Positions 29,974 through 63,897 of a stretch of DNA of 64,000 nt are shown piece by piece. How positions within the stretch are numbered: the stretch's first letter is position 1; every line of letters begins with the position of its first letter. Under the pieces are notes generated by a model. It was not told the origin of the DNA. It saw nothing but the letters and a program-made list of their open reading frames with translations, and made no database searches. The stretch covers positions 62,001 to 126,000 of IMG/VR virus record IMGVR_UViG_3300025770_001492; one strand, given 5' to 3'. The position numbers were made by a program, and so were the translations under genes.

Positions 29974-29981
29974 ATTTTTAT

Positions 29982-31613
29982 TTAGACTTTTTTCGCAAGC
30001 CCGCTTGTCATCCTCTCCAAAGCATTTGAAACATCATATGAGTCTAAGGAAACATTAATCAAAAACATTTCCTTAGCATTAAGGGCCTCGTCAACAACTG
30101 ACTCTAATTCAGATTCAGTCTCTACCATCGCCCCTTTACCTCCGCCAATTATATCAACAAACTTATGATAGTTCCAGTCAGGAATATCATTAAAATCCCC
30201 ATCCAATAAAAATCTTTCTGTGGTATAACCATGATTATTCAATATGAATATAATTGGATTTAATTTATTCGCAACAATAGTGCTTAACTCCGTGCAAGAC
30301 ATTTGAAAAGCACCATCGCCAACTATCACAATAGTCCTGCTATCGGGTCTGGCAAATCCTGCCCCCAACGCTCCCGGAATTGATGTGCCCATACTTGTGT
30401 AAAATGCAGAACCTAAAAAAGCATTTTTGTGATGCATTGTTAAATCTGCTGCCCCAAACAAACTGTCGCCTATGTCTGCAACGACCGACATATCTTTTGT
30501 CAGCAAAGAATCAATTTTATCAAACAACCTTTTGCTCGTAATCGGAGTACCCGCAAGCGGAGAGAAACTCTTATTAGATCGAGTATTCACCACAGAAGGC
30601 TTGTTTGAATGGGTAGGAATCGAAGCCTCATCAAAAAGTTTATTGCAAAAGTCTTCAAAATTTACAGAAGCATACATATGATTTTTAACTTTCAATCCTT
30701 GTATGCTGCAAGATACGGTATTCCTTTTTACAAATTTTGAAGGCATAAAGCTTAATGTCATATCAGTGAGCATCGCCCCAAACATAAGAAGACAATCAGA
30801 TCCCTCGACTGCTGCCTGCACTCCCTCTTGACTCGTGCTTCCAGCATATACGCCTAAATAAAGCGGATGAGTCTCGCCAATTACTGATTTGCTAAGAAGA
30901 GTTGTTGCAATTGGAATGTTCGCTTTTTCAGCAAACTTGACCAGTTTAGATCCAAGTCCAAATCTTGAAACCTCAATCCCTGCTAATATAACTGGATTTT
31001 TTGAATTATTTATCCAAGTTTCAACTTCTTCAAAAGACTCTTCTAAGTTTTGCAAATCTGTACTTGGAGAATCTGGAGTTCCCTGCTTGTAAACATCGTA
31101 ACCAATCGGCTTGTCCGCAACGTCTCTTGGAAGCTCAATATAGATGGGCTGCTTATAGTAGTGAAGGGCTTCAAAAGCTTTATCGATTTTGTATCCCGCT
31201 GTATTCGGGTCGTCTAGAACAACAGACTCACATGTGAAATTTTCAAAAACTTCTTTTTGACACTCGAATGAACGAACCATATGATGGAGCAAAACACCTT
31301 CGTCTCGCTCTTTCATTCCAGGCGAACCTGAAATGACAACTAAAGGAGACCTCTCAGCATAAGCACATTGAACTGCATTTATAAGTTTTGCTGCTCCAAC
31401 ATTATATGTGACACAAACGCAACCAATACCCTTTATTCTAGAATACGCATCTGCTGCAAATCCTGCGTGATTTTCGTCTGTAGTGTTGATCAAACTTATG
31501 TCTGAATTATTTAATTTTTTATAGAAATTAAGAACATAATCTCCAGGAACTCCAAAGACGTGTTCAATTCCAGAATTTTTCATTCTGTCGATTAAGAAAT
31601 CTGACACTAACAT
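29982..31613 (-). CDS. ThDP-dependent 2-keto-acid decarboxylase (pyruvate/indolepyruvate/phenylpyruvate decarboxylase family)
   Basis: FGVPGDY, DENHAGFAADAY, LLHH and the ThDP-binding GDGAFQM...NNHGY. Confidence 0.93.
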   Translation of the reverse strand: MLVSDFLIDRMKNSGIEHVFGVPGDYVLNFYKKLNNSDISLINTTDENHAGFAADAYSRIKGIGCVCVTYNVGAAKLINAVQCAYAERSPLVVISGSPGMKERDEGVLLHHMVRSFECQKEVFENFTCESVVLDDPNTAGYKIDKAFEALHYYKQPIYIELPRDVADKPIGYDVYKQGTPDSPSTDLQNLEESFEEVETWINNSKNPVILAGIEVSRFGLGSKLVKFAEKANIPIATTLLSKSVIGETHPLYLGVYAGSTSQEGVQAAVEGSDCLLMFGAMLTDMTLSFMPSKFVKRNTVSCSIQGLKVKNHMYASVNFEDFCNKLFDEASIPTHSNKPSVVNTRSNKSFSPLAGTPITSKRLFDKIDSLLTKDMSVVADIGDSLFGAADLTMHHKNAFLGSAFYTSMGTSIPGALGAGFARPDSRTIVIVGDGAFQMSCTELSTIVANKLNPIIFILNNHGYTTERFLLDGDFNDIPDWNYHKFVDIIGGGKGAMVETESELESVVDEALNAKEMFLINVSLDSYDVSNALERMTSGLAKKV

Positions 31614-31643
31614 AACCGCTCCTTGGGGAATGCGAGGTTTAAT

Positions 31644-31687
31644 TATTTATAAATTACAGAATAGCTCTCTGCCTGTCTTGGCGTCAA
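31644..31687 (-). promoter_or_regulatory. tandem sigma70-like and T4-late-like promoters of the decarboxylase gene
   Basis: TTGACG-N18-TATTCT (31658-31687), then a perfect TATAAATA (31644-31651), then AAGGAG. Confidence 0.5.
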
Positions 31688-31697
31688 TACCATTAAC

Positions 31698-32519
31698 CTA
31701 TTCCGTTGTAGGAGAAAAAGGAATGTGAATTAAAAACCCTTCGCCTGTCGTTGGAAATCTCCTAACCCATTCGACACCTGATCCTATGGTGCAGCCAAAA
31801 TCAGTAGGCGTAAGACTGCTAGGTGTGAAACTGGGGGTGACAGATGGGGCACTAGATGAAAGAAAGCTCACGCTCTCTTCCATTTTCAAAAGTTTAAATT
31901 CAAACCAATAACAACCAGGAAGACATGTGTTATTGGCGTTCCAATTATATACCAAAAGAGTTTCTAATAACTGGTCTTTTAAAGTTGTTCCGTCTTCCTG
32001 AGTTATGTCTCCCAAAACCAACTCTATAACAGCAGACGCATCCAAAACCCTAAATATCCTCATCGAAGATCCTTTCTTCCATGAAGACTCATTGGTTCCA
32101 TTATATCCTCTCTGAACTTGAATTAACTTATTTGTTTCATCAAATCCAGTCACAAGCATATGCTCAGGAAGTCTAACTCTATCCATGATGATGATGTCGC
32201 CAACCATCACCTGTTCAAACCCAATGTCGTCTGCCAACCTAAAGTAGGTATCAGATGTGTCAATGCTCGTCTTTAACTTAGCAATAGCCCACATGTTTGC
32301 CTCTAACACCAAAGACGTGTCTAGTTCCCCAGTGTCTGGGTCTGTCAAGTCTAAAGGACCATCACAATCATCAGCAGCCAGTCTAAATGGCGGCTTAACA
32401 TCGTGCCTTCTAATGGTAAAATCAGGACAAACATTGGACGGACATCCAAATTTATCTAAACAGTTGGAGTTTGTCGTGAGATCACACGAAACTCCTATTC
32501 TCGCTCCTTGAATACTCAT
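31698..32519 (-). CDS. probable virion structural protein (BppU-like baseplate-type N-terminus)
   Basis: FTIRRHD..P...D..GPLDLT and Y.W....T..PG.YWFEF pattern; TATATA-N5-ATG at 32519. Confidence 0.45.
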   Translation of the reverse strand: MSIQGARIGVSCDLTTNSNCLDKFGCPSNVCPDFTIRRHDVKPPFRLAADDCDGPLDLTDPDTGELDTSLVLEANMWAIAKLKTSIDTSDTYFRLADDIGFEQVMVGDIIIMDRVRLPEHMLVTGFDETNKLIQVQRGYNGTNESSWKKGSSMRIFRVLDASAVIELVLGDITQEDGTTLKDQLLETLLVYNWNANNTCLPGCYWFEFKLLKMEESVSFLSSSAPSVTPSFTPSSLTPTDFGCTIGSGVEWVRRFPTTGEGFLIHIPFSPTTE

Positions 32520-32538
32520 ACAACTATATATGGAATAT

Positions 32539-34689: not shown

Positions 34690-34884
34690 CTAACCTTTTT
34701 TCTTTTTCTTTTTCTTTTTCTTCTTCTTTTTAGTTAAACTCTCCAACTCAAAAGGCGAAGCAGTTGACCTGCCGTGGACAGAGCCTACAACGGCCAGCGG
34801 CATCAAGCCAAGAGCGGCGGCATGTCTGGCCCTTGTGGATGCACTAGATTCTTTGGTAATTAGCCAATCTTTGAAAGTAATCAT
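34690..34884 (-). CDS. small basic protein with 12-Lys tail and capsid-targeting-like N-terminus
   Basis: MITFKDWLITKE...TKKKKKKKKKKKKG; TACATA-N5-ATG. Confidence 0.65.
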   Translation of the reverse strand: MITFKDWLITKESSASTRARHAAALGLMPLAVVGSVHGRSTASPFELESLTKKKKKKKKKKKKG

Positions 34885-34965
34885 AAATGTATGTATTACT
34901 TCAAGATCCCATTATTTATAAAATTGATAAATGCAATTCCGACATTTTTCAATTAGAAATTTATA

Positions 34966-42901: not shown

Positions 42902-43678
42902 TCAATATGCTTGGCCAGAGGATATAGATTCTGGAGCCGAATGAGATAATTCGTCGCTCAACTTGTCAAGCTTTTCTTTAAGAGACTCCATCTTTTTTTC
43001 CATTGCTTCTGAGCGTTTTCCCAAACCTAACAAAGAATTGATTTTGTCACCCATCTCGTGCAGTTTAGCCTTAGCTTCTTCGATTTTCTCAAGATCTTCT
43101 TCACTATATGTTACTCCCAATTGCTCTGGTTCCAACTCTTGGTCAGGACCAATCGTATTTGGACGGATAGGATTGGGGGATTGCCTTATTGCATCAGCAA
43201 CTTTTTTGATTCCCTCTTTATCAATAACTGACTCTGTGAACACCTCTTTAGGAGCAAGCTCGCCATTCGCAGACATATTGTGAACAGTGTTCCAGTAGTC
43301 AGCATCTCGCTCAGACACGCCATCTGAAGGGTCTGAGTTCGTGGCTCCAAAAAAACTGACGTTTGCAGTTTTTTGGGACGGGACGAAGTGGTTAGGAGCA
43401 TTTTCGAAAACTCCATCGCTTTTTGCCTTTTCCCACTTTTCACACCAATCATCAAAGTCTCCTCTTTGCTCCTGCTCTCTGTCTTGGCCAAAAGAAGGAT
43501 CGAATCCAGCAGAAGAAGAAACAAATGACTCGCTATCTGTCACTTTAGGCTGTGGATTTAAGTTTCCATTTCCATCAGTAATAGCACCTTTGGAAAAGTC
43601 TTCTTCATTCTTCGCTTTGTCCCATTTTTGACACCAATCGGCAAAGTCTTCTCTTTGTTGTTGTTCATAATCTTTCAT
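42902..43678 (-). CDS. hypothetical protein with duplicated DF.DWC.KW motif and C-terminal coiled coil
   Basis: QREDFADWCQKWDKAK and QRGDFDDWCEKWEKAK; TATATA-N6-ATG. Confidence 0.7.
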   Translation of the reverse strand: MKDYEQQQREDFADWCQKWDKAKNEEDFSKGAITDGNGNLNPQPKVTDSESFVSSSAGFDPSFGQDREQEQRGDFDDWCEKWEKAKSDGVFENAPNHFVPSQKTANVSFFGATNSDPSDGVSERDADYWNTVHNMSANGELAPKEVFTESVIDKEGIKKVADAIRQSPNPIRPNTIGPDQELEPEQLGVTYSEEDLEKIEEAKAKLHEMGDKINSLLGLGKRSEAMEKKMESLKEKLDKLSDELSHSAPESISSGQAY

Positions 43679-43702
43679 AATAATTATATATGGTTTTCGA
43701 GC

Positions 43703-49544: not shown

Positions 49545-49577
49545 TAAAAAAGCTCCCCTCGCAATGCGAGGGGAGCT
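49545..49577 (-). terminator. intrinsic terminator of tmRNA
   Basis: 12-bp GC-rich stem agctcccctcgc/gcgaggggagct plus U-tract. Confidence 0.88.
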
Positions 49578-49581
49578 TCAG

Positions 49582-50305: not shown

Positions 50306-50321
50306 ACTATTATATACCAGC

Positions 50322-51871: not shown

Positions 51872-51937
51872 AATATACTCCTGTTTTATATTTAGTGTAT
51901 TATGTGCTTTTTTTTTAAAGCATAAAGTATATATTGT

Positions 51938-52258
51938 ATGCAATTCAGAAAATGGCTAATAAAAGAAATGGCTCACATATCAATTGATGAACCAATCGAC
52001 ATTGGAGATCAAAAAAATGTATCTATGATTGATATGCAGTTTGAACTATATCCCGACATGACCCAGACAACTCTAGCTCACTGGATAGTCAACGGATTTG
52101 CCGCCAAAGTCCCAAATAGCAATTATTATATAGTTTTTGACGGAAAAACAGGAAAAGCAAAGGTGTCCGATTCGACAGAGAACAAAATGCAAGTTCCTGG
52201 CGAATGGCACAAAATGGCTTATATGTCGAGCGATATGCCAGCTTGGAAATCTGCGTGA
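51938..52258 (+). CDS. hypothetical protein with capsid-targeting-like N-terminus
   Basis: MQFRKWLIKEMAH; TATATA-N4-ATG. Confidence 0.65.
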   Translation: MQFRKWLIKEMAHISIDEPIDIGDQKNVSMIDMQFELYPDMTQTTLAHWIVNGFAAKVPNSNYYIVFDGKTGKAKVSDSTENKMQVPGEWHKMAYMSSDMPAWKSA

Positions 52259-52259: not shown

Positions 52260-53640
52260 TTATTGATCTGACCAAACACGATCAGTTCTTCCTAGAAAAG
52301 GCGCAGACTCAATTGCTTCGTCCATGGGAATGGGATCAATATTCGAAAAAGATGGTTCTCCCGAAAATCTAAACTTAATTTGTTTTCCGCCACGAGCAGG
52401 ACTCAAAAATCTAGAAAACAATAGACCATGCTTGATTGGATCGACATCCGTTATCCCAAGACAGTAGCAACTAAGAGCACCAACTGCCGAGCCTCTTCCG
52501 GGACCGACTGCCGAAGAACCGCTGGAGCCATATGTCTCAAAGTACCATCTTCTGGCTTCATCGGTCATCATTTTTTGGATCAAAAAGTAAGAGGAAAAGC
52601 CTTTTTGGCAAATTAAAGAATATTCTTCTTCTATCCTATCCAAATATTCTTTATTCCTAGGAATTTTCCTCTTAACAACCCCTTCTATGATTGATTCCTT
52701 AAACTTAATGTCAGATTCGCTAAATGCAGGAAGTTTGATAGTTCTATCAAGCTTTACGCCTTTTGCTTTTTCGCAAAGGGCAACGGTATTTAACTTGGCC
52801 TGCTTAAGTATTTCGTAATCTATTACATCCTTGTAATCACTTTCCCACTTCGCATTTATCTCTTCTTCTGACTTCATCCATAAGTTTGAATCTTGCAATT
52901 CGAACATATCAGCCATGTCATTCTGTGCCAACGCTTGTTCGATTTGCTTCATGGTTCTTCCTGTTTGAACCATAATCATCTTTCTCTGCATTTCGCTGTC
53001 TTCTTTGAGACAGTAGTGGCAATCATTTGTAACAATAATTGGTAAATTATATTTTTGGCTGGCTTTTATTATAAACTCATCATAAGGCTTTTGTTTCGAG
53101 AAGTCTAAAAGCATTATTTCTAGATAGAAGTTTTCTCCGAACATGGCCATATATTTTTCGACCATCTCCATAGCTGGACCTTCGCCACCCACATCAAAAG
53201 CTTGTCCAATTTCACTGTTATAACAGCAAGAAGTGAATATAATTCCTTCTTTATATTGCATGAGGACTTCGTGATTGACTCTGGGTTTCCTGTAGAAACC
53301 CCTCGTCCAACCCCAAGATGAAAGAGTAACCAGATTGCTGTAGCCTGTTTCATTATAGGCTATGGCAAGCAGATGATTCGATTTTCTTAACTTGGCTTGC
53401 TCTTCTTGCGTACCCAGACCTCTATTGAATTCCGTCATAGAAGGAATAGTGGTCGTGTCAGGCTGCAACTGATTTACATAAAGCTCACAAGCAAATATAG
53501 GCTCTAGGTTGTTTTCATCGCATGCTCTAATCTGGCGTGGGACAGAACCCATCGCACCATGATCTGATATGCATAAAAACTTTTGATTTACCTGTTTAGA
53601 ATATTTTCCATATTCTTCAACAGTGGCGTATCCATCTAAG
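52260..53640 (-). CDS. dnaE: DNA polymerase III alpha, N-terminal polypeptide, exon 2 (PHP domain and first palm segment)
   Basis: LDGY, SDHG, ACELY, NHL, NDCHY, GPGRGS and FSRFLSPAR, then a short unrelated tail and stop. Confidence 0.93.
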
Positions 53641-53863
53641 CACAAACTCCACAGTTTCTTGTGGTGTAGACTATATCATCACCCCGAAGGGTGTCGGACG
53701 CTCTGGCCTGTAATTAAGAGGACTGAACCTCTCAGGTAGTCGTTGCACGTTCCAAAAGTGTACTTCTGGCTTCGCTCAGGATTGCCCTCGACTTTACGTT
53801 AGGGTTTCCCTGAATTCATCCGATTTGCATGCAAGATTTCTCTCACATGGCCCCAGTTAGTTA
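53641..53863 (-). ncRNA. group I self-splicing intron, 223 nt, no endonuclease ORF
   Basis: P1 GCCU|UA..UGGGGC with U.G at the 5' splice site; P2 with GAAA loop; P3 UCGGAUG/CGUCCGA; P4 UUCAGG/CCUGAG; P7 GACUA/UAGUC; P8 with UUCG loop; P9; terminal omega-G. Removal restores HTDFSLLDGY. Confidence 0.93.
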
Positions 53864-53919
53864 AGGCTGAAATCAGTATGTCTGTGTAGATGTTCAAAAC
53901 CTACAATCAGGTCTTTCAT
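53864..53919 (-). CDS. dnaE: DNA polymerase III alpha, N-terminal polypeptide, exon 1
   Basis: AAGGAG-N6-ATG; MKDLIVGFEHLHRHTDFS+CT carrying the PHP HxH motif. Confidence 0.9.
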
Positions 53920-53979: not shown

Positions 53980-54504
53980 TTAATCTTTCCATTGTTTCCA
54001 TTTGCCCGTCTTTTCATTTTTAAAGTAAAAAGCAGCTTTTGGATCTTGTGTGTCTACCTTGAAGAAAGGCTCAGATCCTTTTCTGTTTCTGCACCACTTG
54101 TTTTCAACAGGCGACTCCAGCATGGCTTCACGATTTACAATGAACAGCCTTTTGTAATCGCCCCCGATTATCATCATATGAGTGGCATGCTCTTCTGCTT
54201 TGTCCCTTTTGCGGTAAGGGAAGTCCATTGTATGAAATTTGAAAGGAACGTCAAACCATTTTGTTCCCCAATCTTGCTTTATCTCGGCCTCAATTCTCCA
54301 TTCACCGATACTCTTTTTTGAATGCGTTCCAGCAACATCCCATATCTTTTTAAATTTTCCTCTGCTCTCGTCTAAGTTCTCTGATATTTTTTTGAATCCA
54401 CGTTGTTGTAAAAATTCCGTTGCCACTAGCTTTGCAGGTCCATCATACTTTTCGTACCTATCTTTGCAAAACCTTATATCATTAGGTTTTGGCATCAAAT
54501 ACAT
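53980..54504 (-). CDS. PD-(D/E)XK nuclease-like protein
   Basis: WDVAG...IEAEIKQDW pattern. Confidence 0.55.
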   Translation of the reverse strand: MYLMPKPNDIRFCKDRYEKYDGPAKLVATEFLQQRGFKKISENLDESRGKFKKIWDVAGTHSKKSIGEWRIEAEIKQDWGTKWFDVPFKFHTMDFPYRKRDKAEEHATHMMIIGGDYKRLFIVNREAMLESPVENKWCRNRKGSEPFFKVDTQDPKAAFYFKNEKTGKWKQWKD

Positions 54505-55208
54505 TCCTTAAACTTAGAGCATCTCCTTATCTTTGCTATAGTTTCGAAACCTTTGGTTCCCAAAATCCCATCAGCAAAGCCGTAGTACACTGCCTCTTCC
54601 GCAGACATGTACCAATCACTCTTATCCTTGAGCTTTTTATCTATCCAAGATATAATTCGTGATTCTGTGTATTCTTTCTCTAAAAAGAACTCTCCAATCT
54701 TACAGCGTCTAGCAAATATTTGCAACATACGTTTCATATATTTATTATTCATTTCCACAGCGGAGTTTACAGCTATGGAGTTATCATGCAAAGCTATAGA
54801 ACCATGGTGAATCATGAATTCACAATTAGGCGTTAAAACTCTTTTATCAGCCGCTTGCAACAAAATTCCACTCATAGAAGAAGCTTGTGCATAAGTAACA
54901 AACGTGACTGATGAGTTTGCAAATCTAATTGCATCAAACATCGCTAACCCATCGCACCAACTTCCGCCAGTAGAATGCATGTGTACCAGTACGTTTTCAG
55001 AATTCTGATTCTCTAAAACAGATAAATTTTTATTAAATCTAACTGCCATTCTGTAATCTACACCTGGTTCGGAATCGTCAGACAAAGGGCTTAAAGAACT
55101 GTGCAGAAAGAGTTCTCTTGTATAGTGATTGATATTGTGAGAGTGAACATCGCTGAGAAGCTGTTCAATTTCCGACTTTTTACGCAAACTATTTTTCGTT
55201 GTAGCCAT
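54495..55208 (-). CDS. clpP: ClpP-like ATP-dependent protease proteolytic subunit
   Basis: STGG, ASSM (Ser), MIHHG (His) and DWYMSAEEAVYYGFADGI (Asp); GGAGG before ATG at 55208. Confidence 0.88.
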   Translation of the reverse strand: MATTKNSLRKKSEIEQLLSDVHSHNINHYTRELFLHSSLSPLSDDSEPGVDYRMAVRFNKNLSVLENQNSENVLVHMHSTGGSWCDGLAMFDAIRFANSSVTFVTYAQASSMSGILLQAADKRVLTPNCEFMIHHGSIALHDNSIAVNSAVEMNNKYMKRMLQIFARRCKIGEFFLEKEYTESRIISWIDKKLKDKSDWYMSAEEAVYYGFADGILGTKGFETIAKIRRCSKFKECI

Positions 55209-55319
55209 CGCAACCTCCAAAAAAGTCTTTATTTAATTCACTATTATATATCTGATTTATATTCTATTTATCTTTTTTAACTTCCTTCCTAGGAAAATAT
55301 TAAAACTATTAACTTCAAA

Positions 55320-55458: not shown

Positions 55459-57051
55459 CTATAGCGATTCGTATTCTTCTCTGGTCATGACGGCCACATC
55501 GCCATCCTGTGTTCCTACGCACCAATAAACTATTTCTTCGTCATCGGAACCAGTAGTAGACAACACCACATCATTCCCCCAAATGAATCTTAAAGACTTT
55601 AAAGTGGGGATTAAATCCGGCTCATACAAGCCTCTGCCATCGGAGTTGTGCTCTAGCAACATGACTCCCTTGCCTTGGTGGTTTGGATCTACTAGATATA
55701 TCTCTGGCAAGCCTCCATTCAAATGTCTTTTGATCAACTTACTTTTGATTGACTTGTGGTCACGATTTTCAATCTTGTACTCGCCATTTGGATATCTTTT
55801 CCATTCAAAAAACTCATATTTATTACAAAAATCTTCTGTGAAAAACTCCATCAAAGCTGTTAGGTCATTATATTGCTTTCGAACATCAAATATTTTATCT
55901 CTGCCTAGACCTAGATTCTTATCCCAATTTTCTTTTTCTACTATATTGCTACATTCTTCGTACTCTTGGCCAAACTTGCCTTTATTCCACCTCTCTTCGA
56001 TATCCAACAAAAGACAGAATCCTAGCTTATAAGGATTCATCGAATACTTGCCTCCGAGAACGCCCATCTTGTGAGCGGAGTATTCAACGATGCCGCAGTC
56101 TTCGCCTGTCTGCCCTAAGCCACAAAGTCCCATTTCACACATTACTGTATAATCTGTAAAGCTTGCCCATCCTTCGTTGAGCATTTTTGTAACTCTTTGA
56201 GGCGAAAAATATAAACTTTCCTCATACATCATGGAAAGAATGTCTGACTGCCAAGGTTTCAAAGGAGCACTATCTCTTAAAAATCCCATAATGTCTTTAG
56301 TTGGATTTTTAAATATTCCAATTTGCTGTGCGGCCTCATCTCGACTAATCTTTTCTTTTTGGCCATCAATCCATCTTTTAGGATTGATATAAGGCTCCAT
56401 GTAATCACGGTCAGAATTTACACCTAACCTTTTAGGCTGCTTGTAGGTTCTCTCATCTTGTATGACACGATCTTTTACAACCTTTTCTTCCCAAGCCTTC
56501 GCTGAGTCTATCAAAGTTTCAATCGAGCAGCAGTGGTCGATAAATTCTGTAACTTTCTCCACGCCCCAACGCTGCATGTATTTTCGGATGCGGGTTCCAT
56601 GATTAGCAAGTTGGTTCATCATATTTTGCGAGGTGGGCGCAAAATATATGTTGTTCTTAAAAAAGTCATTGTGGCCTAAAGCGTGAGCAATAACCGTAAC
56701 ATTATCCACCAGCGTATTTGAATCCAAACAGTAGATGTAACAAGGATTGGTATTAATAACCATTTCATAAATTCGGTGCATCCCATGCTCGTAACCTTTT
56801 TGAAGGCTTTCGTATTCCATTCCCCATTTCCAGTGTGGGTAACGAACTGGAAATCCTCCGTAAGATGCAACTTCACTTATTTCATCGTAAGTCAGCATCT
56901 GAACAACGGTGGGATAAAAATCGCAGCCGAAGTCTTTAACTGCCTTGAATATGTCAGGCATAATCTTCTTAAGCTCACTAGGAAGCTGAACGCCTGGCAC
57001 AGTGCTGTCACCGAGAAGCAGAGAAGAGCCTCTGAAAAATTTACTAGACAT
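55459..57051 (-). CDS. spoVR: SpoVR/YcgB family protein
   Basis: GFPVRYPHWKWG, IYEMVIN..PC, VIAHALGHNDFFKN, TKMLNEGWASF and NPYKLGF. Confidence 0.95.
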   Translation of the reverse strand: MSSKFFRGSSLLLGDSTVPGVQLPSELKKIMPDIFKAVKDFGCDFYPTVVQMLTYDEISEVASYGGFPVRYPHWKWGMEYESLQKGYEHGMHRIYEMVINTNPCYIYCLDSNTLVDNVTVIAHALGHNDFFKNNIYFAPTSQNMMNQLANHGTRIRKYMQRWGVEKVTEFIDHCCSIETLIDSAKAWEEKVVKDRVIQDERTYKQPKRLGVNSDRDYMEPYINPKRWIDGQKEKISRDEAAQQIGIFKNPTKDIMGFLRDSAPLKPWQSDILSMMYEESLYFSPQRVTKMLNEGWASFTDYTVMCEMGLCGLGQTGEDCGIVEYSAHKMGVLGGKYSMNPYKLGFCLLLDIEERWNKGKFGQEYEECSNIVEKENWDKNLGLGRDKIFDVRKQYNDLTALMEFFTEDFCNKYEFFEWKRYPNGEYKIENRDHKSIKSKLIKRHLNGGLPEIYLVDPNHQGKGVMLLEHNSDGRGLYEPDLIPTLKSLRFIWGNDVVLSTTGSDDEEIVYWCVGTQDGDVAVMTREEYESL

Positions 57052-57056
57052 ATTTT

Positions 57057-58289
57057 TTATCCTTGAATCTTCTTTTCTATTAAACCCGGTTTTCCTAATA
57101 AATCAATAATTGCTTCTCTGATTTTTACGTCTCTTTCTTCCTCTGAAATTTCAGAAGCAGGCCCCCAACTAGATACATTGTCTTCTGAGTCAGACATTAT
57201 ATCTGTGGTCACAACGTTAGAAGGAGGGCTTTCCGACATTAAAACATTCTCATCTACATATTCTTTCAAGCTTCCCTTGTATCTCCAAGGCAAAATTTGA
57301 GCTATTCCTATAAAGTTGACAATATCTTCTGTGAATTGATCTTTTATTATTTTTGAAAAGACTTCGTTGTCATTGTCCCAGTTTTCCCCGTCAGTAAAAT
57401 AAATTACGTACACATTCCACTTTTCAGGAGGAAACCTATTTTCCATCTGCTTTGAAATTAATTTCAAAGCAGATGAACATGTTGTTCCACCACCATATCG
57501 GTATTTATAGAATCTTTTCTCATCAACTTCCGAAGCTTCTGTGTCGTGCCAAATATAACATCTTTCGACACGTTTATAAAACTGCCTTATCCATAAATCT
57601 ATCCACCAAGACATATCGCTAACAATATCACACTTTGTCTGGTCCATTGAAGCAGATCCATCACGAGCGAAAAATATAACAGCATTGCTCGATGGAACTT
57701 TTATTTCTTTATATCGCCTATACCTGCGATCACTGTTTATCGGCATGATCATTTTTACAGGCTCCTTCATGCCGGGAATGGCATGGAGTTTTTCCAATTC
57801 TCCAGAAGCAGCCATTCTCTTCATGGCTTGCTGCATAGTTCTTCGATTGTGCCTTAAGGATTCTGGACCTTGTAATGAAATATCATTGTATTTAATTTTA
57901 ATTTCATCATAAGTTTGATTTGGCTTTGGCTTTAAATCAGGAAGTTCTAATTCATCCTGAAGAAATTTTAAAACATCTTCCAAGTCTATGGATATAGTAA
58001 CGCCATCAGATTGTCCTTGTCCTGCCTTGCCCTTGCCTTTTCCATCGCCTGGATCATCTCTCCCAACTACGTCTCCAGGTTTTCCACCGCCACGTCCGAC
58101 TCCCTCGCCACTATTCCCATAAACAATATGTGGTATGTCTATTTTTGGGATTGTGATGTTTATCTTTTTCCCATCTCCACGAGTTCTAAATATAGATCCG
58201 TTTTTAATCCTCTTTTGAAGATCTTTTCTTATTCGGCCAGAATAAACATCTCTAAATCTTTTGTGGTCTTCTTCAATACGTCTTGGCAT
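57057..58289 (-). CDS. yeaH: YeaH/YhbH (DUF444) vWA-like protein
   Basis: Gly-rich GRGGGKPGD segment, MIDAS-like DGSASM, GGGT..SSA and FTDGENW. Confidence 0.93.
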   Translation of the reverse strand: MPRRIEEDHKRFRDVYSGRIRKDLQKRIKNGSIFRTRGDGKKINITIPKIDIPHIVYGNSGEGVGRGGGKPGDVVGRDDPGDGKGKGKAGQGQSDGVTISIDLEDVLKFLQDELELPDLKPKPNQTYDEIKIKYNDISLQGPESLRHNRRTMQQAMKRMAASGELEKLHAIPGMKEPVKMIMPINSDRRYRRYKEIKVPSSNAVIFFARDGSASMDQTKCDIVSDMSWWIDLWIRQFYKRVERCYIWHDTEASEVDEKRFYKYRYGGGTTCSSALKLISKQMENRFPPEKWNVYVIYFTDGENWDNDNEVFSKIIKDQFTEDIVNFIGIAQILPWRYKGSLKEYVDENVLMSESPPSNVVTTDIMSDSEDNVSSWGPASEISEEERDVKIREAIIDLLGKPGLIEKKIQG

Positions 58290-58310
58290 TACTGAACCCT
58301 TTAGTAGTCT

Positions 58311-58351
58311 AAAATAAAGAGCCACCCCCACAAAGAAGTGAAGAGTGGCTC
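58311..58351 (-). terminator. terminator-like hairpin between prkA and yeaH
   Basis: GAGCCACTCTTCAC-TTCTTT-GTGGGGGTGGCTC followed by TTTATTTT. Confidence 0.55.
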
Positions 58352-58364
58352 ATCCTCTTTATAT

Positions 58365-60479
58365 CTAGGAGTCGTTAGCTACATCGCCTCTTGCAAATAT
58401 AGAACCAACATAATCAAGAACATCCGTTGCGGATTTTTCGTTATATCCATGATGCTTAATCAAGCGGGACTTAATTGCATCAATTTTTTCTTGAACGTCT
58501 GGATCAACTACAGAGGCACCAAGAGAATTTAAAGCAGAAAGCTTTATGTGATCTCTAGTGTCTTCGAATAGTTTGGTTTGCAAAGCCTTTTGCAACTGTG
58601 GGTTACTATCCCACTTAAAGGTTTTGCTTTCATGGGCAAGATTTCCAATGAAAGCTGCCAAACTTCTGCGGAAGTCGTCAGAGCCAACTTCTGGAACATC
58701 AATTTTTTCTTCAATCGATCTCATCAACTGCTCATCTGGCAACTGTTCCTGTCCTGTGTACGGATTGGTCACTTTTGCCTTTTTAATGTATGCCATCACG
58801 TTATCGACATAATTAGTACAAAGTCTAATAATGGCATTCTCATCACCAACAAGTGCTTTTTGAACTTCTGTTTTCAAAATCTCATCTAGCTCTTTCATAG
58901 CAAAATCAACACAAGTGTTAAACCTACTTGCGTCCTCTTGATTAGAGATCAAAGAAGATCCGTCAAGTCCTTCACGAATTTCATTCAGCACCATGAATGG
59001 ATTGATGTAATCATGGTGAGAACTCAAACAGTTAGAAATCTTGTCCTGAACATATCGAGCAGAGACTCCGCCAGACATCCCTTCATTTGGATATTTATCT
59101 CGCATTTCTTTTACTGAATCTTCAGTCCAGCCAGGCATTGATTTTCCATCATAAAGCTTTGACTTCTCTACCAAAGAAATTTTGCCATCTTTATCATCTT
59201 GCAATCTTGTCAAAACCGCCCAAAGAGCGGCAATCTCTAAAGTATGAGGAGCAACATGCTGAGGAACTTTACTTTTGCCGTAATCGTTCTGATAAACTTT
59301 AAGTTCATCAGAAAGACTTAAAAGATATGGAACATCGATCTTCACAGTTCTATCACGCAAGGCTTCCATGCTTTGATTGTTCTTGAGTTTTTCATACTCA
59401 GGATTATTTGTATGCCCAATTAAGACTTCATCGACCCCAATCTGAGCGAACTTTTTCGGCTTTATGCTTCGCTCTTGAGACGCTCCCAAAAGATCGTACA
59501 AAAACTCTTGAGCAAGCTTCAGCATCTCAATAAATTCAACAACACCACGATTCCCCACACAAAACTCACCATCAAAGTTGAAAGCTCTAGGATCACTATC
59601 AGATCCAAAGTGAGGAAGCTTCGCATAATTGATGTCACCAGTTAGCTCAGTAGCATCTTGATTCTTTTCGTCTTTAGGTTGAAAAGTTGCAATCCCGCAT
59701 CTGTCTGCTTCAGAATAAACTTTTCTCACAACAACAATGTGCTCGTCAACAACCTTTCTCCAATCACCCTTGTGTATTTTCAAAAGTTCATCCATAAACT
59801 TTTTACATCTCGGATTAAGCTCCCCGTCGCAACGGAGTTCGTATGTTTGCTCTCCTTGAGGGTGATTCCCAAACTCTGCCTTTACTTCATTCAAATCTTT
59901 GAGAAGTTCTGCTCGTACTTTCATGGGCACTAACTTAATGGGATCGTCATGCATCGGACAATCATCAGAATCATTTGTATAAATTCCATCGGACCCTGTT
60001 GGAAGGTTTTTCCAACGGTATGTATACCAAGCACCTTGGTCTGTTTGAGAGTATTCTTCCATGCCTCTTTTGATAAGTCGGCAAATTGTAGACTTAGACG
60101 AACCTACTGGCCCGTGGAGAAGAAGAATTCTTTTTTCGGTTCCGTACCAACCGGCAGCACCCCGAATAAATTTAACCAATTCATGTAGAGTATTGTCCAA
60201 ACCATAAATTGGAATTTCATCATTATCAAAGAAGTTATAATGGATATAGGTTTTTCGATACTTTTTAAACTCAGAAGTTCCAGCATTCATGATCATATCA
60301 TAAACTCGCTGGTAAGCTGATCGGACTAAGCCTGGACTTTTATAACAACTATCAATGTACTCAGAAAAAGTCATTTCCTGATTAAGTGTTTGAAATTTAC
60401 CAGTATCAAAAAATCCAGCAAGCTTGTCTAGCTTAGAAGTGCCTTCATGCTCTTCCTTGTTGAAATTTTCATTTTCCAT
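58365..60479 (-). CDS. prkA: PrkA/YeaG family AAA+ serine kinase/ATPase
   Basis: LLHGPVGSSKST Walker A, DEKNQDATELTG, NRGVVEFIEM, HTNNPEY and ALRDRT. Confidence 0.96.
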   Translation of the reverse strand: MENENFNKEEHEGTSKLDKLAGFFDTGKFQTLNQEMTFSEYIDSCYKSPGLVRSAYQRVYDMIMNAGTSEFKKYRKTYIHYNFFDNDEIPIYGLDNTLHELVKFIRGAAGWYGTEKRILLLHGPVGSSKSTICRLIKRGMEEYSQTDQGAWYTYRWKNLPTGSDGIYTNDSDDCPMHDDPIKLVPMKVRAELLKDLNEVKAEFGNHPQGEQTYELRCDGELNPRCKKFMDELLKIHKGDWRKVVDEHIVVVRKVYSEADRCGIATFQPKDEKNQDATELTGDINYAKLPHFGSDSDPRAFNFDGEFCVGNRGVVEFIEMLKLAQEFLYDLLGASQERSIKPKKFAQIGVDEVLIGHTNNPEYEKLKNNQSMEALRDRTVKIDVPYLLSLSDELKVYQNDYGKSKVPQHVAPHTLEIAALWAVLTRLQDDKDGKISLVEKSKLYDGKSMPGWTEDSVKEMRDKYPNEGMSGGVSARYVQDKISNCLSSHHDYINPFMVLNEIREGLDGSSLISNQEDASRFNTCVDFAMKELDEILKTEVQKALVGDENAIIRLCTNYVDNVMAYIKKAKVTNPYTGQEQLPDEQLMRSIEEKIDVPEVGSDDFRRSLAAFIGNLAHESKTFKWDSNPQLQKALQTKLFEDTRDHIKLSALNSLGASVVDPDVQEKIDAIKSRLIKHHGYNEKSATDVLDYVGSIFARGDVANDS

Positions 60480-61298: not shown

Positions 61299-61299
61299 C

Positions 61300-61830: not shown

Positions 61831-61912
61831 GTTTTAATTTAGTTACCAGTGTAAATTTTCAATAACTAAATAAACTACTTAGACTTACAATCGCAGTGAC
61901 TGCTTTATTGCT

Positions 61913-62119
61913 TTATTCCTTTGATTCATCTTCTATCAATTCTCCAGATTCAGCATCAACGATAGCAAAATCAGAAACATCCATTTTCAATGTTTCTACA
62001 TACTCTGCACATGCAGCGAGCATTTCTTTCGCTTCTTCAACATCAGAAGTAAACCACAATCCAACTTGAGGATGCTTTAAGGTTCTGCCTGTCTTTTTAT
62101 TCAATAAAGTATACATCAA
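61913..62119 (-). CDS. hypothetical protein
   Basis: 68 aa. Confidence 0.6.
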   Translation of the reverse strand: MMYTLLNKKTGRTLKHPQVGLWFTSDVEEAKEMLAACAEYVETLKMDVSDFAIVDAESGELIEDESKE

Positions 62120-62508
62120 CCTATATTAGTATCAGGCGATGGAACTTGAACCGTTGAGTTAGCATTATTTTGAGCTTGTCCAAATTGTTGAGGCTGACCT
62201 ATGCCGCCGCCACGAACCGAACCAGATTTTGGCGTCGAGGGTGGGGACATATTAGAAGCAGGGGGAACAGGATTCGGCTGAGTGCCGGGACTCATGTTTG
62301 AAGCTGGTCTTTTGTTGTTTGTTTGCAATTTGTCAGACACATTAAATGCCGATCTGGGCTTTTTAGAACTATTTAAATTATCTTGAGGATTGATGCCTGC
62401 CATTTGTGGATTAGCAGGTGCTACAGGGCTTTCTCCTGCCCTTCCTGCTGCGTTCATTCCTGTGGCACTTGCTCCCGTGCCTTGCTCAAGCCATTTTCTG
62501 AATTCCAT
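62116..62508 (-). CDS. Pro/Gln/Gly-rich disordered protein with capsid-targeting-like N-terminus
   Basis: MEFRKWLEQG; PASNMSP twice; TACATA-N5-ATG. Confidence 0.65.
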   Translation of the reverse strand: MEFRKWLEQGTGASATGMNAAGRAGESPVAPANPQMAGINPQDNLNSSKKPRSAFNVSDKLQTNNKRPASNMSPGTQPNPVPPASNMSPPSTPKSGSVRGGGIGQPQQFGQAQNNANSTVQVPSPDTNIG

Positions 62509-62522
62509 ACTATTATGTAGAT

Positions 62523-62801
62523 ATGGGACGTAAAAAAACGCTAATCAACAAGAAAAACAAGAAAAGATTAGAAAGCTGTGCTTTTTGCGAATGTGCAGAC
62601 TATGAAATTTTAGATGTCCACAGAATAAACGAAGGAGCAGACGGAGGAAGATATACCAGTCACAACTCCTTGACTGTCTGTGCAAACTGCCATCGGAAAA
62701 TTCATTCTGGAAAAATAAAAACATTCAGAAAGCATCTAAGCACTGGCGGATATGTCCTTCATTGTGAAATCGAAGGACAAGAACAGTTTTTGAAACTATG
62801 A
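62523..62801 (+). CDS. HNH endonuclease family protein
   Basis: CAFC...DVHRI...N.LTVCANCHRKIH. Confidence 0.85.
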   Translation: MGRKKTLINKKNKKRLESCAFCECADYEILDVHRINEGADGGRYTSHNSLTVCANCHRKIHSGKIKTFRKHLSTGGYVLHCEIEGQEQFLKL

Positions 62802-63062
62802 TTACTTCTTTGCGTTATTGTCAGGCAAAAATTTTGCTGCATCGGCTGGCTTTAGCTGGCCGCTATCGATTGCTTTTATAACATTATTTTTTACAGCATC
62901 TTTTACGGCTTTAGAATCTCCACCACTTTTGATTGTTTTTGTGGTGTCTGCTTTAATTTGCTGGCTCAACTGAGAATTCTCTGCGTCCTTTTCCGCATTG
63001 CCCTGTTGTCCCACTTCCATCTCTTTAAGAGATACCCATTTTTCAAAAGAATAATTATTCAT
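62802..63062 (-). CDS. hypothetical protein with capsid-targeting-like N-terminus
   Basis: MNNYSFEKWVSLKEM; TAGATA-N7-ATG. Confidence 0.65.
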   Translation of the reverse strand: MNNYSFEKWVSLKEMEVGQQGNAEKDAENSQLSQQIKADTTKTIKSGGDSKAVKDAVKNNVIKAIDSGQLKPADAAKFLPDNNAKK

Positions 63063-63119
63063 AGTAATTTATCTATGTTTGAAGCGTAAATATTTAAAAC
63101 TTTATTTAAGGATGGATAA

Positions 63120-63305
63120 ATGAAAAAAATACTAACTTTACTAATTTTGGGAATGTGTTTTTCCCTAACTGGATGCTCTTCCGACGACTCTTCCTGCTGC
63201 TGTGAGGGGGATAAATGCCATTGTGTGGATATCGGTGCCTGCTGCTGTGAAGAAGGCAAATGCAAAATAGAATGTGATTGCGAAGGATGCGATTGCAGCA
63301 AATAA
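63120..63305 (+). CDS. Cys-rich (metallothionein-like) lipoprotein
   Basis: MKK-hydrophobic-LTGC lipobox, then 13 further Cys in 42 residues; AAGGA SD. Confidence 0.7.
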   Translation: MKKILTLLILGMCFSLTGCSSDDSSCCCEGDKCHCVDIGACCCEEGKCKIECDCEGCDCSK

Positions 63306-63327
63306 ACGTTGCGCAGACCACATAGCA

Positions 63328-63852
63328 TCAAATAGGTTTCAACCTCGCCATAAACTCTATCTCTTCTATCATGGCGACAACGCCTTCTTTAATCAAGTCA
63401 TCTACGGCTGTCTCTACTCCGAACCTTTTTCCGGGTCGCTGTAGATGATCCTTGTAGTCGTGACACAATATATCCTTAGCTCCACATCTAATTGATCCTA
63501 ATATATCCCTCTTCACAACCTCTGCATCGTGGTTGCCATCAATAAAAGCAAAATCTATTGATTCAGTAGTGGATTCAAAAAAATTATCACTAGACATGTG
63601 ATGAACAATACAATTGGTTAATTTCCTTGCTTTTATTCCAGCTACGAAAGCTGCCTTCCATTCTTCAATAGGCCATATATCGACACAATGAATTTTGCCG
63701 TTGCATATTTCAGCCATTGGAAAAATTGATGCACCTTGATATACGCCTATGTTGACTATATTCTGATAATTGTTTTCTTTGACAATCTCAGCCATTATTT
63801 GATATTGCTTATTTGAGCATTTTCCTCTCATGCCAGTATATAGTAATATCAA
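63328..63852 (-). CDS. class I SAM-dependent methyltransferase (Methyltransf_24-like)
   Basis: NIGVYQGAS, FIDGNH and CHDY. Confidence 0.82.
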   Translation of the reverse strand: MILLYTGMRGKCSNKQYQIMAEIVKENNYQNIVNIGVYQGASIFPMAEICNGKIHCVDIWPIEEWKAAFVAGIKARKLTNCIVHHMSSDNFFESTTESIDFAFIDGNHDAEVVKRDILGSIRCGAKDILCHDYKDHLQRPGKRFGVETAVDDLIKEGVVAMIEEIEFMARLKPI

Positions 63853-63897
63853 ATAAATTGTATTTTTAAAAAGTTTGAGGTGTGGGTAAATAAATAT

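What the first reader, a model, noticed from the sequence alone, without database searches (positions are those of the whole stretch)
29974..63897. TA(N)ATA-N5-ATG: late-type promoters that would produce leaderless mRNAs
Seen: the box ends exactly 5 nt before the ATG at 62508 (TACATA-ATAGT), 50305 (TATATA-ATAGT), 34884 (TACATA-CATTT), 32519 (TATATA-GTTGT), 29973 (TAAATA-AAAAT) and 63898 (TAAATA-AATAT). It ends 4-7 nt before the ATG at 51938, 43678 and 63062. None of these has an SD between box and ATG. Where an SD exists (51871, 42836, 55208, 31613) the box lies further upstream. Established: T4 late promoters TATAAATA end at -6, so N5 puts the A of ATG at +1. Inference: a degenerate late promoter driving a largely leaderless regulon. 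Caveat: TANATA is common in AT-rich DNA, so the fixed spacing is the real evidence.
Basis: partly seen in the sequence, partly recalled or inferred. Interest (0 to 1): 0.66.

Follow-up and report, generated by a model that had tools for sequence, protein, structure and literature searches.

The report
Promoter box abutting start codons
In this huge marine T4-related phage and its relatives, a short TA(N)ATA promoter-like box sits 4-5 bases before the ATG of about 6-8% of genes, which probably gives late messenger RNAs with no leader, many of them for proteins that carry a T4-like capsid-targeting peptide.

Summary
In the window, TANATA-N5-ATG occurs 14 times against 3.07 +/- 1.65 in shuffles.

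With motif-blind gene calls, the box peaks at N4/N5 before start codons:
- this 245-kb contig: 20 observed against 2.7 expected
- LR756511.1 (595 kb): 55 against 6
- an IMG/VR 320-kb relative: 25 against 6
- the cultured phage XacN1: N5+N6 = 20 against about 4
- T4: none

Box genes never have a Shine-Dalgarno sequence and carry no -35 element. The base before the ATG is a pyrimidine in 81-93% of them, against about 50% elsewhere. Some boxes follow a terminator directly, and three palindromic TATATA boxes serve divergent ATGs.

The phage encodes a gp55-like sigma factor that has region 2 only. Two relatives carry T4-type gp23 and gp21, and their capsid and portal genes have the same box further upstream plus an SD.

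Unexpectedly, box genes are strongly enriched for N-termini that resemble T4's capsid targeting sequence.

My reading is a T4-type late promoter used in a leaderless configuration. This applies to a minority of genes, not to a "largely leaderless regulon". No transcription start sites (TSS) are mapped, and sites 29973 and 63062 are weak.

The parts
62506..62519 (-). TACATA-ATAGT-ATG unit. It starts gene 62116-62508 (130 aa), whose N-terminus MEFRKWLEQG resembles the T4 capsid targeting sequence (CTS).
   Evidence: T precedes the ATG and there is no SD. The neighbouring gene 62523-62801 is divergent, only 14 nt away.
50311..50316 (.). Palindromic TATATA shared by two divergent ATGs, each 5 nt away: 50305 (-) for ORF 49985-50305 (106 aa), and 50322 (+) for gene 50322-50963 (213 aa).
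   Evidence: The same two-way layout occurs at contig positions equal to window 148234/148251 and 75279/75325, and in relative G003 at 205491-205512. The 50305 ORF fell below my coding score, and its CTS-like MNFSKFLE begins at residue 12.
34882..34895 (-). TACATA-CATTT-ATG unit. It starts gene 34690-34884 (64 aa), with the CTS-like N-terminus MITFKDWLITKE.
   Evidence: An exact TATAAATA lies a further 28 nt upstream.
32517..32530 (-). TATATA-GTTGT-ATG unit. It starts gene 31698-32519 (273 aa, weak tail-protein similarity).
   Evidence: The orthologue in LR756511.1 also has TATATA-N5-ATG. The gap to the upstream gene is 19 nt.
29971..29984 (-). TAAATA-AAAAT-ATG before the IF3 homologue 29425-29973. 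This is a weak instance.
   Evidence: IF3_N and IF3_C domains. The TAA of the box is the stop codon of 29982-31613, with a gap of 8 nt. Orthologues in both relatives lack the box. Translational coupling is as likely as a promoter here.
63887..63900 (+). TAAATA-AATAT-ATG unit. It starts a 253-aa gene that runs past the end of the window (63898-64659).
   Evidence: The gene is divergent from 63831.
63829..63842 (-). TATATA-CTGGC-ATG unit. It starts the methyltransferase gene 63328-63831 (167 aa).
51928..51940 (+). TATATA-TTGT-ATG unit (N4). It starts gene 51938-52258 (106 aa), with the CTS-like N-terminus MQFRKWLIKE.
   Evidence: A hairpin with a T-run lies directly upstream.
43676..43690 (-). 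TATATA-ATTATT-ATG unit (N6). It starts gene 42902-43678 (258 aa).
   Evidence: The gap is 24 nt. Orthologues lack the box.
63060..63075 (-). TAGATA-AATTACT-ATG unit (N7). It starts gene 62802-63062 (86 aa, MNNYSFEKWV, CTS-like after 4 residues). This is a weak instance.
   Evidence: An alternative ORF, 63059-63331, would overlap the ATG as ATGA.
55245..55250 (-). TATATA box 36 nt upstream of the SD-led gene 54495-55208. This is a candidate promoter that would give a leader.
   Evidence: The box is followed by ATAGT, as at 62508 and 50305.
51889..51894 (-). TAAATA box 17 nt upstream of the SD-led gene 51689-51871.
31644..31651 (-). Exact TATAAATA, 30 nt upstream of the SD-led TPP-enzyme gene 29982-31613.
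940..1575 (-). Phage sigma factor with regions 2 and 4 (211 aa). It is an alternative reader of the box.
7547..8062 (-). Second phage sigma factor with regions 2 and 4 (171 aa).
29425..29973 (-). Phage IF3 homologue. IF3 is a factor known to modulate translation of leaderless mRNA.
   Evidence: PMC9031893.

Best explanation
TA(N)ATA, with consensus (A/C)-T-A-n-A-T-A-(A), is the only strongly conserved element of a -10-type promoter in this lineage of T4-related huge phages; there is no -35 hexamer.

It is most likely read by host RNA polymerase carrying the phage's gp55-like sigma factor, which has region 2 only. That would make it a late promoter. No phage RNA polymerase was found.

Where the box ends 4-5 nt before an ATG that is preceded by a pyrimidine, transcription starts on the A of the ATG. 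The mRNA then has no leader and no Shine-Dalgarno sequence, and ribosomes would start at the 5'-terminal AUG. Where the same box lies 17-50 nt upstream, an ordinary SD-led late mRNA results.

The leaderless layout is used by a minority of genes. These are chiefly small, mutually unrelated genes whose products begin with a peptide like T4's capsid targeting sequence, so they are probably proteins packed into the prohead.

Shown here: the motif, its spacing, its context, its replication in other genomes, and the gene content.

Inferred, not shown: that the box is a promoter, where the start site lies, which sigma factor reads it, the late timing, and capsid targeting.
For: 1. Positional peak of the box at N4/N5 before motif-blind start calls:
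- this contig: 20 against 2.7 expected (P = 1e-11)
- LR756511.1: 55 against 6 (P = 2e-33)
- the IMG/VR relative G003: 25 against 5.9 (P = 4e-9)
- cultured XacN1 (50% GC): N5 = 12 and N6 = 8 against 1.9 per spacing. GenBank's own start codons agree with mine at all three box genes (ORF233, ORF234, ORF267) that fall in the stretch I checked.
- negative control T4: 0 at N4/5, with boxes 12-30 nt upstream as known for its SD-led late genes.

2. Start-site signature. A pyrimidine precedes the ATG in 25/27, 57/70 and 31/37 box genes, against 46-53% of other SD-less genes (P = 4e-6, 7e-6 and 5e-4).

3. No -35 element: relative entropy upstream of the box is about 0. Sigma-70-type sites are not enriched (60 against 55.6 +/- 7.7). 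TATAAT shows no peak. The last base of the box is A, as in T4's TATAAATA, where a sigma-70 -10 element has T.

4. Architecture. Strong terminator hairpins end 2-14 nt before the box at contig sites equal to window 100163, 141723 and -54691. One palindromic TATATA serves two divergent ATGs three times here and once in G003.

5. Machinery.
- A 181-aa sigma factor matches PHROG 234 "late sigma transcription factor" (E = 6.5e-8), with region 2 only.
- It shares the N-terminal Y[VL]NNK motif with T4 gp55, and pairwise BLAST against gp55 gives E = 0.003.
- It is conserved in both relatives at 66% and 45% identity.
- No RNA polymerase beta subunit was found.

6. Late link.
- The relatives carry T4 gp23 and the gp21 protease. 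Their capsid and portal genes have the box 18-51 nt upstream plus an SD.
- Box genes here include a head-tail adaptor-like gene (N8) and a tail-fibre-like gene.
- Box genes are enriched for CTS-like N-termini, with odds ratios 13, 48 and 9.6. The conserved peptide starts at the Met itself, which fixes those start codons.

7. Precedent. The middle and late mRNAs of Thermus phage phiYS40 are mostly leaderless (PMC3594737).
Against: - No transcript 5' end is mapped. The only RNA run is held as contigs at depth of about 3, and its ends fall inside genes.
- The box is short and AT-rich, and about 6 of the 14 window matches lie inside genes, which is background.
- Conservation at orthologues is modest: 3 of 9 against LR756511.1 and 2 of 7 against G003, with some near misses.
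- In tight arrays with gaps of 7-12 nt, the box overlaps or directly follows the upstream stop codon; in about half of them its TAA is that stop. Reinitiation by the terminating ribosome would explain the missing SD there.
- N4 is as common as N5 in two relatives, so a rigid T4 ruler does not hold.
- The sigma factor lacks T4 gp55's clamp-binding tail, and no gp45 was found.
- Two other phage sigma factors exist, and a weak T-rich patch 14-17 nt upstream of the box is unexplained.
- A few box genes start with GTG or TTG, which are poor leaderless start codons.
Confidence: 0.6

Rival explanations
1. The box is a promoter and the mRNAs are leaderless, but it is not a gp55-type late promoter. It would be read by the host's primary sigma factor as a -10-only promoter, or by one of the two phage sigma factors that have regions 2 and 4. 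Timing could then be early or middle.
For: - Two further phage sigma factors lie in the window.
- There is a weak T-rich patch 14-17 nt upstream of the box.
- The gp55-like protein lacks the clamp-binding tail and no gp45 was found.
- Several box genes are not obviously late: IF3, a methyltransferase and sulfotransferases.
Against: - The last base of the box is A, where a sigma-70 -10 element has its near-invariant T, and TATAAT shows no positional peak.
- There is no -35 hexamer for a sigma factor that carries region 4.
- The same box lies upstream of the capsid and portal genes in relatives.
- The box is linked to CTS-like, prohead-directed proteins.
Confidence: 0.15
2. The box acts in RNA or in translation, not as a promoter. 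It would be an SD-independent initiation or reinitiation signal on transcripts that begin further upstream: an AU-rich element a fixed distance from the AUG, often fused to the upstream TAA stop.
For: - Five of the box sites on this contig, and many in LR756511.1, have gaps of 7-12 nt; in about half the TAA of the box is the upstream stop, in the rest the box directly follows it.
- All box genes lack an SD.
- The phage encodes translation factors (IF3, tmRNA).
Against: - The peak persists when tightly packed genes and TAA-type boxes are removed.
- Terminators lie directly upstream of some boxes.
- A palindromic box serves both strands.
- The pyrimidine before the ATG fits transcription start-site choice.
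- The same box occurs at variable distances upstream of SD-led late genes.
Confidence: 0.12
3. The box and its spacing are inherited baggage. A 5' cassette (box, spacer, ATG, targeting peptide) has spread by duplication and recombination among internal-protein genes, as at T4's internal-protein loci, and the spacing has no mechanistic meaning.
For: - Box and CTS-like N-terminus are strongly associated.
- T4's ipII and ipIII share a near-identical 5' region.
- Box genes are mostly lineage-specific orphans.
Against: - Spacer and flanking sequences are not conserved between sites.
- The proteins are unrelated beyond the N-terminal peptide.
- Genes without the CTS-like peptide still show about 3-fold enrichment.
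- The layout holds in four genomes of 28-50% GC.
- Selection on the pyrimidine before the ATG is not explained by this reading.
Confidence: 0.08

Closest known systems
Bacteriophage T4 late promoters (TATAAATA, read by gp55 with gp33 and the gp45 clamp)
   Same: - Both have only a -10-type AT-rich box ending in ATA, and no -35.
- A small sigma factor with region 2 only, of the same size (181 against 185 aa), shares an N-terminal motif with gp55.
- The lineage has T4-type gp23 and gp21.
- The box lies upstream of the capsid and portal genes.
   Different: - The consensus here is the hexamer TAnATA with a free third base. The exact octamer is not specially enriched.
- In T4 the box never abuts the ATG: 0 of 262 genes at N4/5, with boxes 12-30 nt upstream plus an SD.
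- No gp45 was found, and the sigma factor has no clamp-binding tail.
Leaderless middle and late transcripts of Thermus phage phiYS40
   Same: Most of this phage's middle and late mRNAs lack a leader. A link with the IF2/IF3 balance has been proposed (PMC3594737).
   Different: - The Thermus hosts use leaderless mRNAs widely (PMC12340547, title and abstract). Here about 43-49% of the phage's own genes are SD-led, so its unidentified host probably uses SD initiation.
- In this lineage the layout covers a minority of genes and is tied to one N-terminal peptide class.
- Here the phage itself encodes an IF3.
-10 box adjacent to ORFs in bacteria (Deinococcus-Thermus, Actinobacteria); lambda cI from P_RM
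   Same: A -10-type box at a fixed short distance from the start codon is the accepted sequence signature of leaderless genes (PMC3160421 and PMC12340547).
   Different: Those boxes are of the TAnnnT kind read by the housekeeping sigma factor. Here the box ends in A and goes with a phage late-type sigma factor.
T4 internal proteins IPI-III and their capsid targeting sequence MKTYQEFIAE
   Same: Unrelated small proteins share an N-terminal M-K-T-[YF]-x-[EQ]-[FW]-[IL]-x-E peptide (PMC8442874). A gp21-type protease is present in the relatives. One bearer is an ArdC-like anti-restriction protein, which recalls the anti-restriction role of IPI.
   Different: - T4 ipII and ipIII are SD-led.
- T4 has a handful of such genes. 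Here there are 18-47 per genome.
- Neither cleavage nor packaging has been tested.

Membership tests
T4-type late promoter system (gp55 / gp33 / gp45) | The promoter is a single -10-region AT-rich box (TATAAATA) with no -35 element. | tested here: met
   Only the hexamer and the base on each side carry information, and there is no -35. The consensus is TAnATA, not the full octamer.
T4-type late promoter system (gp55 / gp33 / gp45) | The phage encodes a gp55-family sigma factor: about 185 aa, region 2 only, no region 4. | tested here: met
   - PHROG 234 match with E = 6.5e-8.
- Pfam finds Sigma70_r2 only.
- BLAST against T4 gp55 gives E = 0.003.
- It shares the N-terminal Y[VL]NNK motif with gp55.
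The similarity is weak but consistent. A PDB sequence search did not reach gp55.
T4-type late promoter system (gp55 / gp33 / gp45) | Activation by a sliding clamp: a gp45 clamp and a C-terminal clamp-binding tail on gp55. | tested here: not met
   PF02916 is absent from this contig and from both relatives. The tail SLDFLYEAND of T4 gp55 has no counterpart. This contig is only 49% complete, and a DnaN-type clamp was not searched for.
T4-type late promoter system (gp55 / gp33 / gp45) | The box drives late (structural) genes. | tested here: inconclusive
   The box lies upstream of the gp23-like and portal genes in the relatives, and before the adaptor-like and tail-fibre-like genes here. There are no timing data.
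Leaderless mRNA genes | The transcript 5' end lies at or within a few nt of the start codon. | not testable with these tools
   Only contigs of one metatranscriptome were available, and they carry no 5'-end information.
Leaderless mRNA genes | A -10-type box at a fixed short distance from the start codon, no SD, and a strongly preferred ATG start. | tested here: met
   Peak at N4/N5. None of the box genes has an SD. ATG is the start in 25/27, 68/70 and 37/37 box genes. A pyrimidine precedes the ATG.
T4-type capsid targeting sequence proteins | An N-terminal peptide of about 10 residues like MKTYQEFIAE on otherwise unrelated proteins. | tested here: met
   There are 18, 47 and 31 N-terminal matches, against 1.7, 8.4 and 3.2 expected from internal Met positions. 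The proteins share no homology with each other. The same pattern (with F or Y at the first aromatic position) picked up T4's own CTS-bearing proteins in my T4 control run.
T4-type capsid targeting sequence proteins | Cleavage after the peptide by a gp21-type prohead protease, and presence of the protein in virions. | not testable with these tools
   The protease (PF03420) is present in both relatives but was not found on this half-genome. There are no proteomic data.

The most novel reading that the evidence does not exclude
T4-related huge phages, including the cultured XacN1, may run a dedicated leaderless expression channel.

- gp55-type late promoters would fire exactly on the A of the ATG of dozens of hypervariable genes.
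- The products of those genes carry a capsid-targeting peptide, so they would be packed into the head and injected as anti-defence effectors.
- The phage's own translation parts (IF3, tmRNA) would tune the ribosome for or against 5'-terminal AUG initiation as a temporal switch.
Probability: 0.2. Interest if true: 0.8.

Novelty: new variant of a known kind. Interest (0 to 1): 0.62.

Why it matters
- **A rule for reading these genomes.** If confirmed, it gives a simple sequence rule for finding late, leaderless genes and true start codons in huge uncultured phages, where gene callers built around SD sequences go wrong. My own caller moved several of these starts.
- **Transcription and translation.** It would show that a T4-type late promoter can be placed so as to remove the 5' leader altogether. 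That ties a phage sigma factor to an SD-independent mode of translation, apparently in an SD-using host to judge from the phage's own genes (the host is not identified).
- **A catalogue of candidate injected proteins.** The link with T4-like capsid-targeting peptides picks out 18-47 candidate packaged or injected proteins per genome, including an ArdC-like anti-restriction protein. It is a ready list of possible counter-defence effectors.
- **It can be tested at the bench.** XacN1 is cultured and shows the same layout.

Tried and rejected
- **Metatranscriptome evidence.** One marine RNA run holds pieces of the region, but only as contigs at depth of about 3. Their ends fall inside genes and say nothing about starts.
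- **Raw spacing counts in G003 without gene calls.** Codon periodicity in that 28%-GC genome swamps the signal. The peak appears only with gene calls.
- **A sigma-70 reading.** A -35/-10 scan found no excess of sites, and TATAAT and TAnnnT show little or no peak.
- **The exact T4 octamer TATAAATA as the consensus.** It is only mildly enriched in intergenic DNA.
- **Paralogy among box genes as the source of the repeated layout.** No BLAST hits were found among them.
- **A PDB sequence search with the gp55-like protein.** It returned only generic sigma-factor hits with E > 0.1.
- **A phage multisubunit RNA polymerase and a gp45 clamp.** Neither was found.
- **Other genomes.** Microcystis phage Mel-JY01 and T4 show no excess of the pattern.
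- **Site 42836 as an SD-led gene with an upstream box.** Rejected: the box and the supposed SD lie in a terminator-like hairpin.
- **The 50305 box as the tmRNA promoter.** Rejected: the tmRNA has its own TTTACA-N17-TATAAC directly upstream.

Full report
**Context**

The window is bases 62001-126000 of a 245,522-bp IMG/VR viral contig. The contig has 37.7% GC and CheckV rates it 49% complete. Nineteen seawater DNA runs from many studies hold the region, so it is a widespread marine phage.

- The tool's own control gives 14 TANATA-N5-ATG in the window, against 3.07 +/- 1.65 in dinucleotide shuffles. No shuffle out of 100 reached 14.
- Without any gene calls, counting TANATA-Nk-ATG over the whole contig gives 30 at k=5, against about 12 at other spacings.
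- I then called 346 genes from codon statistics alone and chose starts by coding score, blind to the motif. The end of the box falls at N5 in 15 genes, N4 in 5 and N7 in 5, against 1.4 per spacing elsewhere. For N4+N5 together P = 1e-11.
- The peak survives dropping genes packed within 15 nt of a same-strand neighbour, and dropping TAA-type boxes that could simply be stop codons.
- After the Shine-Dalgarno hexamers, TATATA at N5 is the strongest position-specific hexamer upstream of starts, and TAAATA at N5 is also on the list. TATATA is also the hexamer most enriched in intergenic DNA, 50 of 124 copies in 7% of the genome.

**Replication and controls**

The peak recurs in other genomes.

| Genome | Size, GC | Box at N4/N5 | Background | P |
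|---|---|---|---|---|
| LR756511.1 (uncultured) | 595 kb, 42% | N4 = 23, N5 = 32 | 3.0 per spacing | 2e-33 |
| IMG/VR relative G003 | 320 kb, 28% | N4 = 16, N5 = 9 | 2.9 per spacing | 4e-9 |
| Xanthomonas phage XacN1 (cultured) | 385 kb, 50% | N5 = 12, N6 = 8 | 1.9 per spacing | not computed for N5+N6 |
| T4 | 169 kb, 35% | 0 | boxes lie 12-30 nt upstream | n/a |

- XacN1 is a distant cultured relative in which AT-rich hexamers are rare. The depositors' own start codons agree with mine at all three box genes (ORF233, ORF234, ORF267) that lie in the stretch I checked. Its genome paper does not mention promoters.
- T4 behaves as expected for its SD-led late genes. Microcystis phage Mel-JY01 shows no excess of the pattern.

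**What the sites look like**

- *No Shine-Dalgarno.* None of the 23 box genes in the first gene-call set has an SD, although 43-49% of all genes do, depending on how strictly an SD is scored (one search counts 170 of 345). This is partly forced by geometry.
- *Where the information lies.* It is confined to the hexamer, the base before it (A or C) and the base after it (A). There is no -35 element. Sigma-70-type -35/-10 sites are not enriched in the region.
- *An unexplained patch.* A weak T-rich patch lies 14-17 nt upstream of the box.
- *Pyrimidine before the ATG.* The base just before the ATG is a pyrimidine in 25/27, 57/70 and 31/37 box genes, against 46-53% in other SD-less genes. Pyrimidine at -1 and purine at +1 is the usual preference of bacterial RNA polymerase at start sites (established knowledge). 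This points to the A of the ATG as +1.
- *Terminators directly upstream.* At three contig sites (window coordinates -54691, 100163 and 141723) a strong terminator hairpin with a T-run ends 2-14 nt before the box. That leaves no room for a leader.
- *Two-way boxes.* Three times a single palindromic TATATA has an ATG 4-5 nt away on both strands: window 50305/50322, and contig positions equal to window 148234/148251 and 75279/75325. G003 has one more such case.

**Machinery**

- The contig encodes three sigma-70-family proteins. Two of them have regions 2 and 4.
- The third (contig 201460-202005, outside the window) has region 2 only. Its best match is the PHROG family "late sigma transcription factor". 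It is the size of T4 gp55, aligns weakly with it (E = 0.003) and shares its N-terminal Y[VL]NNK motif. It is 66% and 45% identical to genes in the two relatives.
- It lacks T4 gp55's clamp-binding tail. No gp45 clamp and no RNA polymerase beta subunit were found.
- The two relatives carry a T4 gp23-type capsid protein (E = 1e-87) next to a gp21-type prohead protease, so this is a deep T4-like lineage. The nearest cultured capsid proteins are about 30-33% identical.
- In both relatives the capsid and portal genes have a TAnATA box 18-51 nt upstream, followed by an SD.

**An unexpected link**

The proteins behind the boxes are unrelated to each other. Even so, many begin with M-x(0-3)-F-[KR..]-[EQ..]-[WFY]-[LI], usually followed within a few residues by E.

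- Window examples: MEFRKWLEQG (62508), MQFRKWLIKE (51938), MITFKDWLITKE (34884).
- Examples from LR756511.1: MKTFNQWLE, MKTFKEFAALKE.
- T4's capsid targeting sequence is MKTYQEFIAE (PMC8442874). The slightly looser pattern used for the T4 control run (F or Y at the first aromatic position) picked up T4's own CTS-bearing proteins.
- The pattern occurs at 18, 47 and 31 N-termini, against 1.7, 8.4 and 3.2 expected from internal methionines.
- It is strongly tied to the box, with odds ratios 13, 48 and 9.6 (P = 1e-5, 1e-28 and 1e-6).
- Because the conserved peptide starts at the Met itself, those start codons are secure.
- One bearer is a 659-aa protein with PAP2 and ArdC-like anti-restriction domains. 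This recalls the anti-restriction role of T4 IPI (PMC3012670).
- T4's own ipII and ipIII are SD-led, so the leaderless layout is what differs here.
- Genes without the CTS-like peptide still show roughly a threefold excess of boxes.

**Limits**

- No 5' end is mapped. The one RNA run is held only as low-depth contigs.
- Only about 6-8% of genes use the layout, so "largely leaderless regulon" overstates it.
- Conservation of the box at orthologues is modest.
- Site 29973 (the IF3 gene) is better explained by coupling, because its TAA is the upstream stop codon and the orthologues lack the box.
- Site 63062 is N7 with TAGATA.
- The box at 42836 sits in a terminator loop.
- The 50305 ORF scored poorly as coding.
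- N4 is as frequent as N5 in two relatives, and N6 is frequent in XacN1. The start site must therefore be set by the pyrimidine-A step, not by a rigid ruler.

**Verdict**

The best reading (confidence 0.6) is a T4-type late promoter, degenerate to TAnATA. It is placed against the ATG so as to give leaderless mRNAs for a minority of genes, chiefly putative prohead-targeted proteins, and it is placed further upstream for ordinary SD-led late genes.

- The closest precedents are T4 late promoters, which are never leaderless, and the leaderless middle and late mRNAs of Thermus phage phiYS40 (PMC3594737).
- IF3 is known to inhibit translation of leaderless mRNA (PMC9031893), and the phage carries its own IF3. 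This connection is only a lead.
- The rival readings are a different sigma factor, an RNA-level signal, or an inherited cassette. Each is given with its evidence in the Rival explanations section.

Noticed in passing
window 49579-49937 (-): A phage-encoded tmRNA (Rfam 112 bits; tag peptide DKTNFAMAA). It has its own sigma-70-like TTTACA-N17-TATAAC directly upstream and a strong terminator at 49549-49579.
   Followed up: partly
window 53648-53873 (-); 52260-53645; 45030-47762: A group I intron (Rfam 90.7 bits) sits directly upstream of the PHP / N-terminal part of a DnaE-type polymerase, so the TTG 'start' at 53645 is probably an exon junction. The rest of DnaE (910 aa) lies 4.5 kb away, beyond the tmRNA and several box genes. 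DNA contigs of run X1 break at about 51216-51258 and 53775-53828, which suggests differences between strains there.
   Followed up: partly
window 29425-29973 (-): A full-length IF3 homologue (both domains) encoded by the phage. IF3 is reported to inhibit translation of leaderless mRNA, so it may bear on the finding.
   Followed up: partly
window 55459-60479 (-): A PrkA kinase, DUF444 (YeaH/YhbH-like) and SpoVR three-gene set carried by a phage.
   Followed up: no
window 26477-31613 (-): Metabolic genes: an aldehyde dehydrogenase (495 aa) and a thiamine-pyrophosphate enzyme (543 aa).
   Followed up: no
window 9482-16831 (-): A giant ORF (about 2,430-2,449 aa) with Laminin_G_3 / concanavalin-like domains and no PHROG match.
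   Followed up: no
L064:5905-7884 (+) (contig 171905-173884): A 659-aa protein with a CTS-like N-terminus (MFRNWIENKE), a box at N7, and PAP2 plus ArdC-N anti-restriction domains. It is a candidate packaged anti-defence protein.
   Followed up: partly
L066:11106-11999 (+) and its orthologues in LR756511.1 (472308) and G003 (131127): A second recurrent N-terminus, M-[AS]-C-x-N, on box genes. It is seen in the head-tail adaptor Ad2-like protein and several others, and its meaning is unknown.
   Followed up: no
contig 244021-244067 (upstream of gene 243283-244020): A run of (TTAG)n in an intergenic spacer. TTAGTTAG-type octamers are among the most intergenic-enriched words on the contig, and they place a stop codon in every frame.
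   Followed up: no
window 139-201 (-): One tRNA just over Rfam's threshold (31.7 bits) that ARAGORN did not call. tRNA-like T-arm sequences flank the start of the window.
   Followed up: no
window 62523-62801 (+): A conserved 92-aa gene (59% identity in G003) that starts 14 nt from the divergent 62508 ATG. It has TATTAT at N6 and no SD, so it may be a further leaderless start of a different box type.
   Followed up: no
Xanthomonas phage XacN1 (AP018399.1), e.g. ORF233, ORF234, ORF267: This cultured jumbo phage shows the same TAAATA-N5/6-ATG layout. Its genome paper does not mention promoters.
   Followed up: partly
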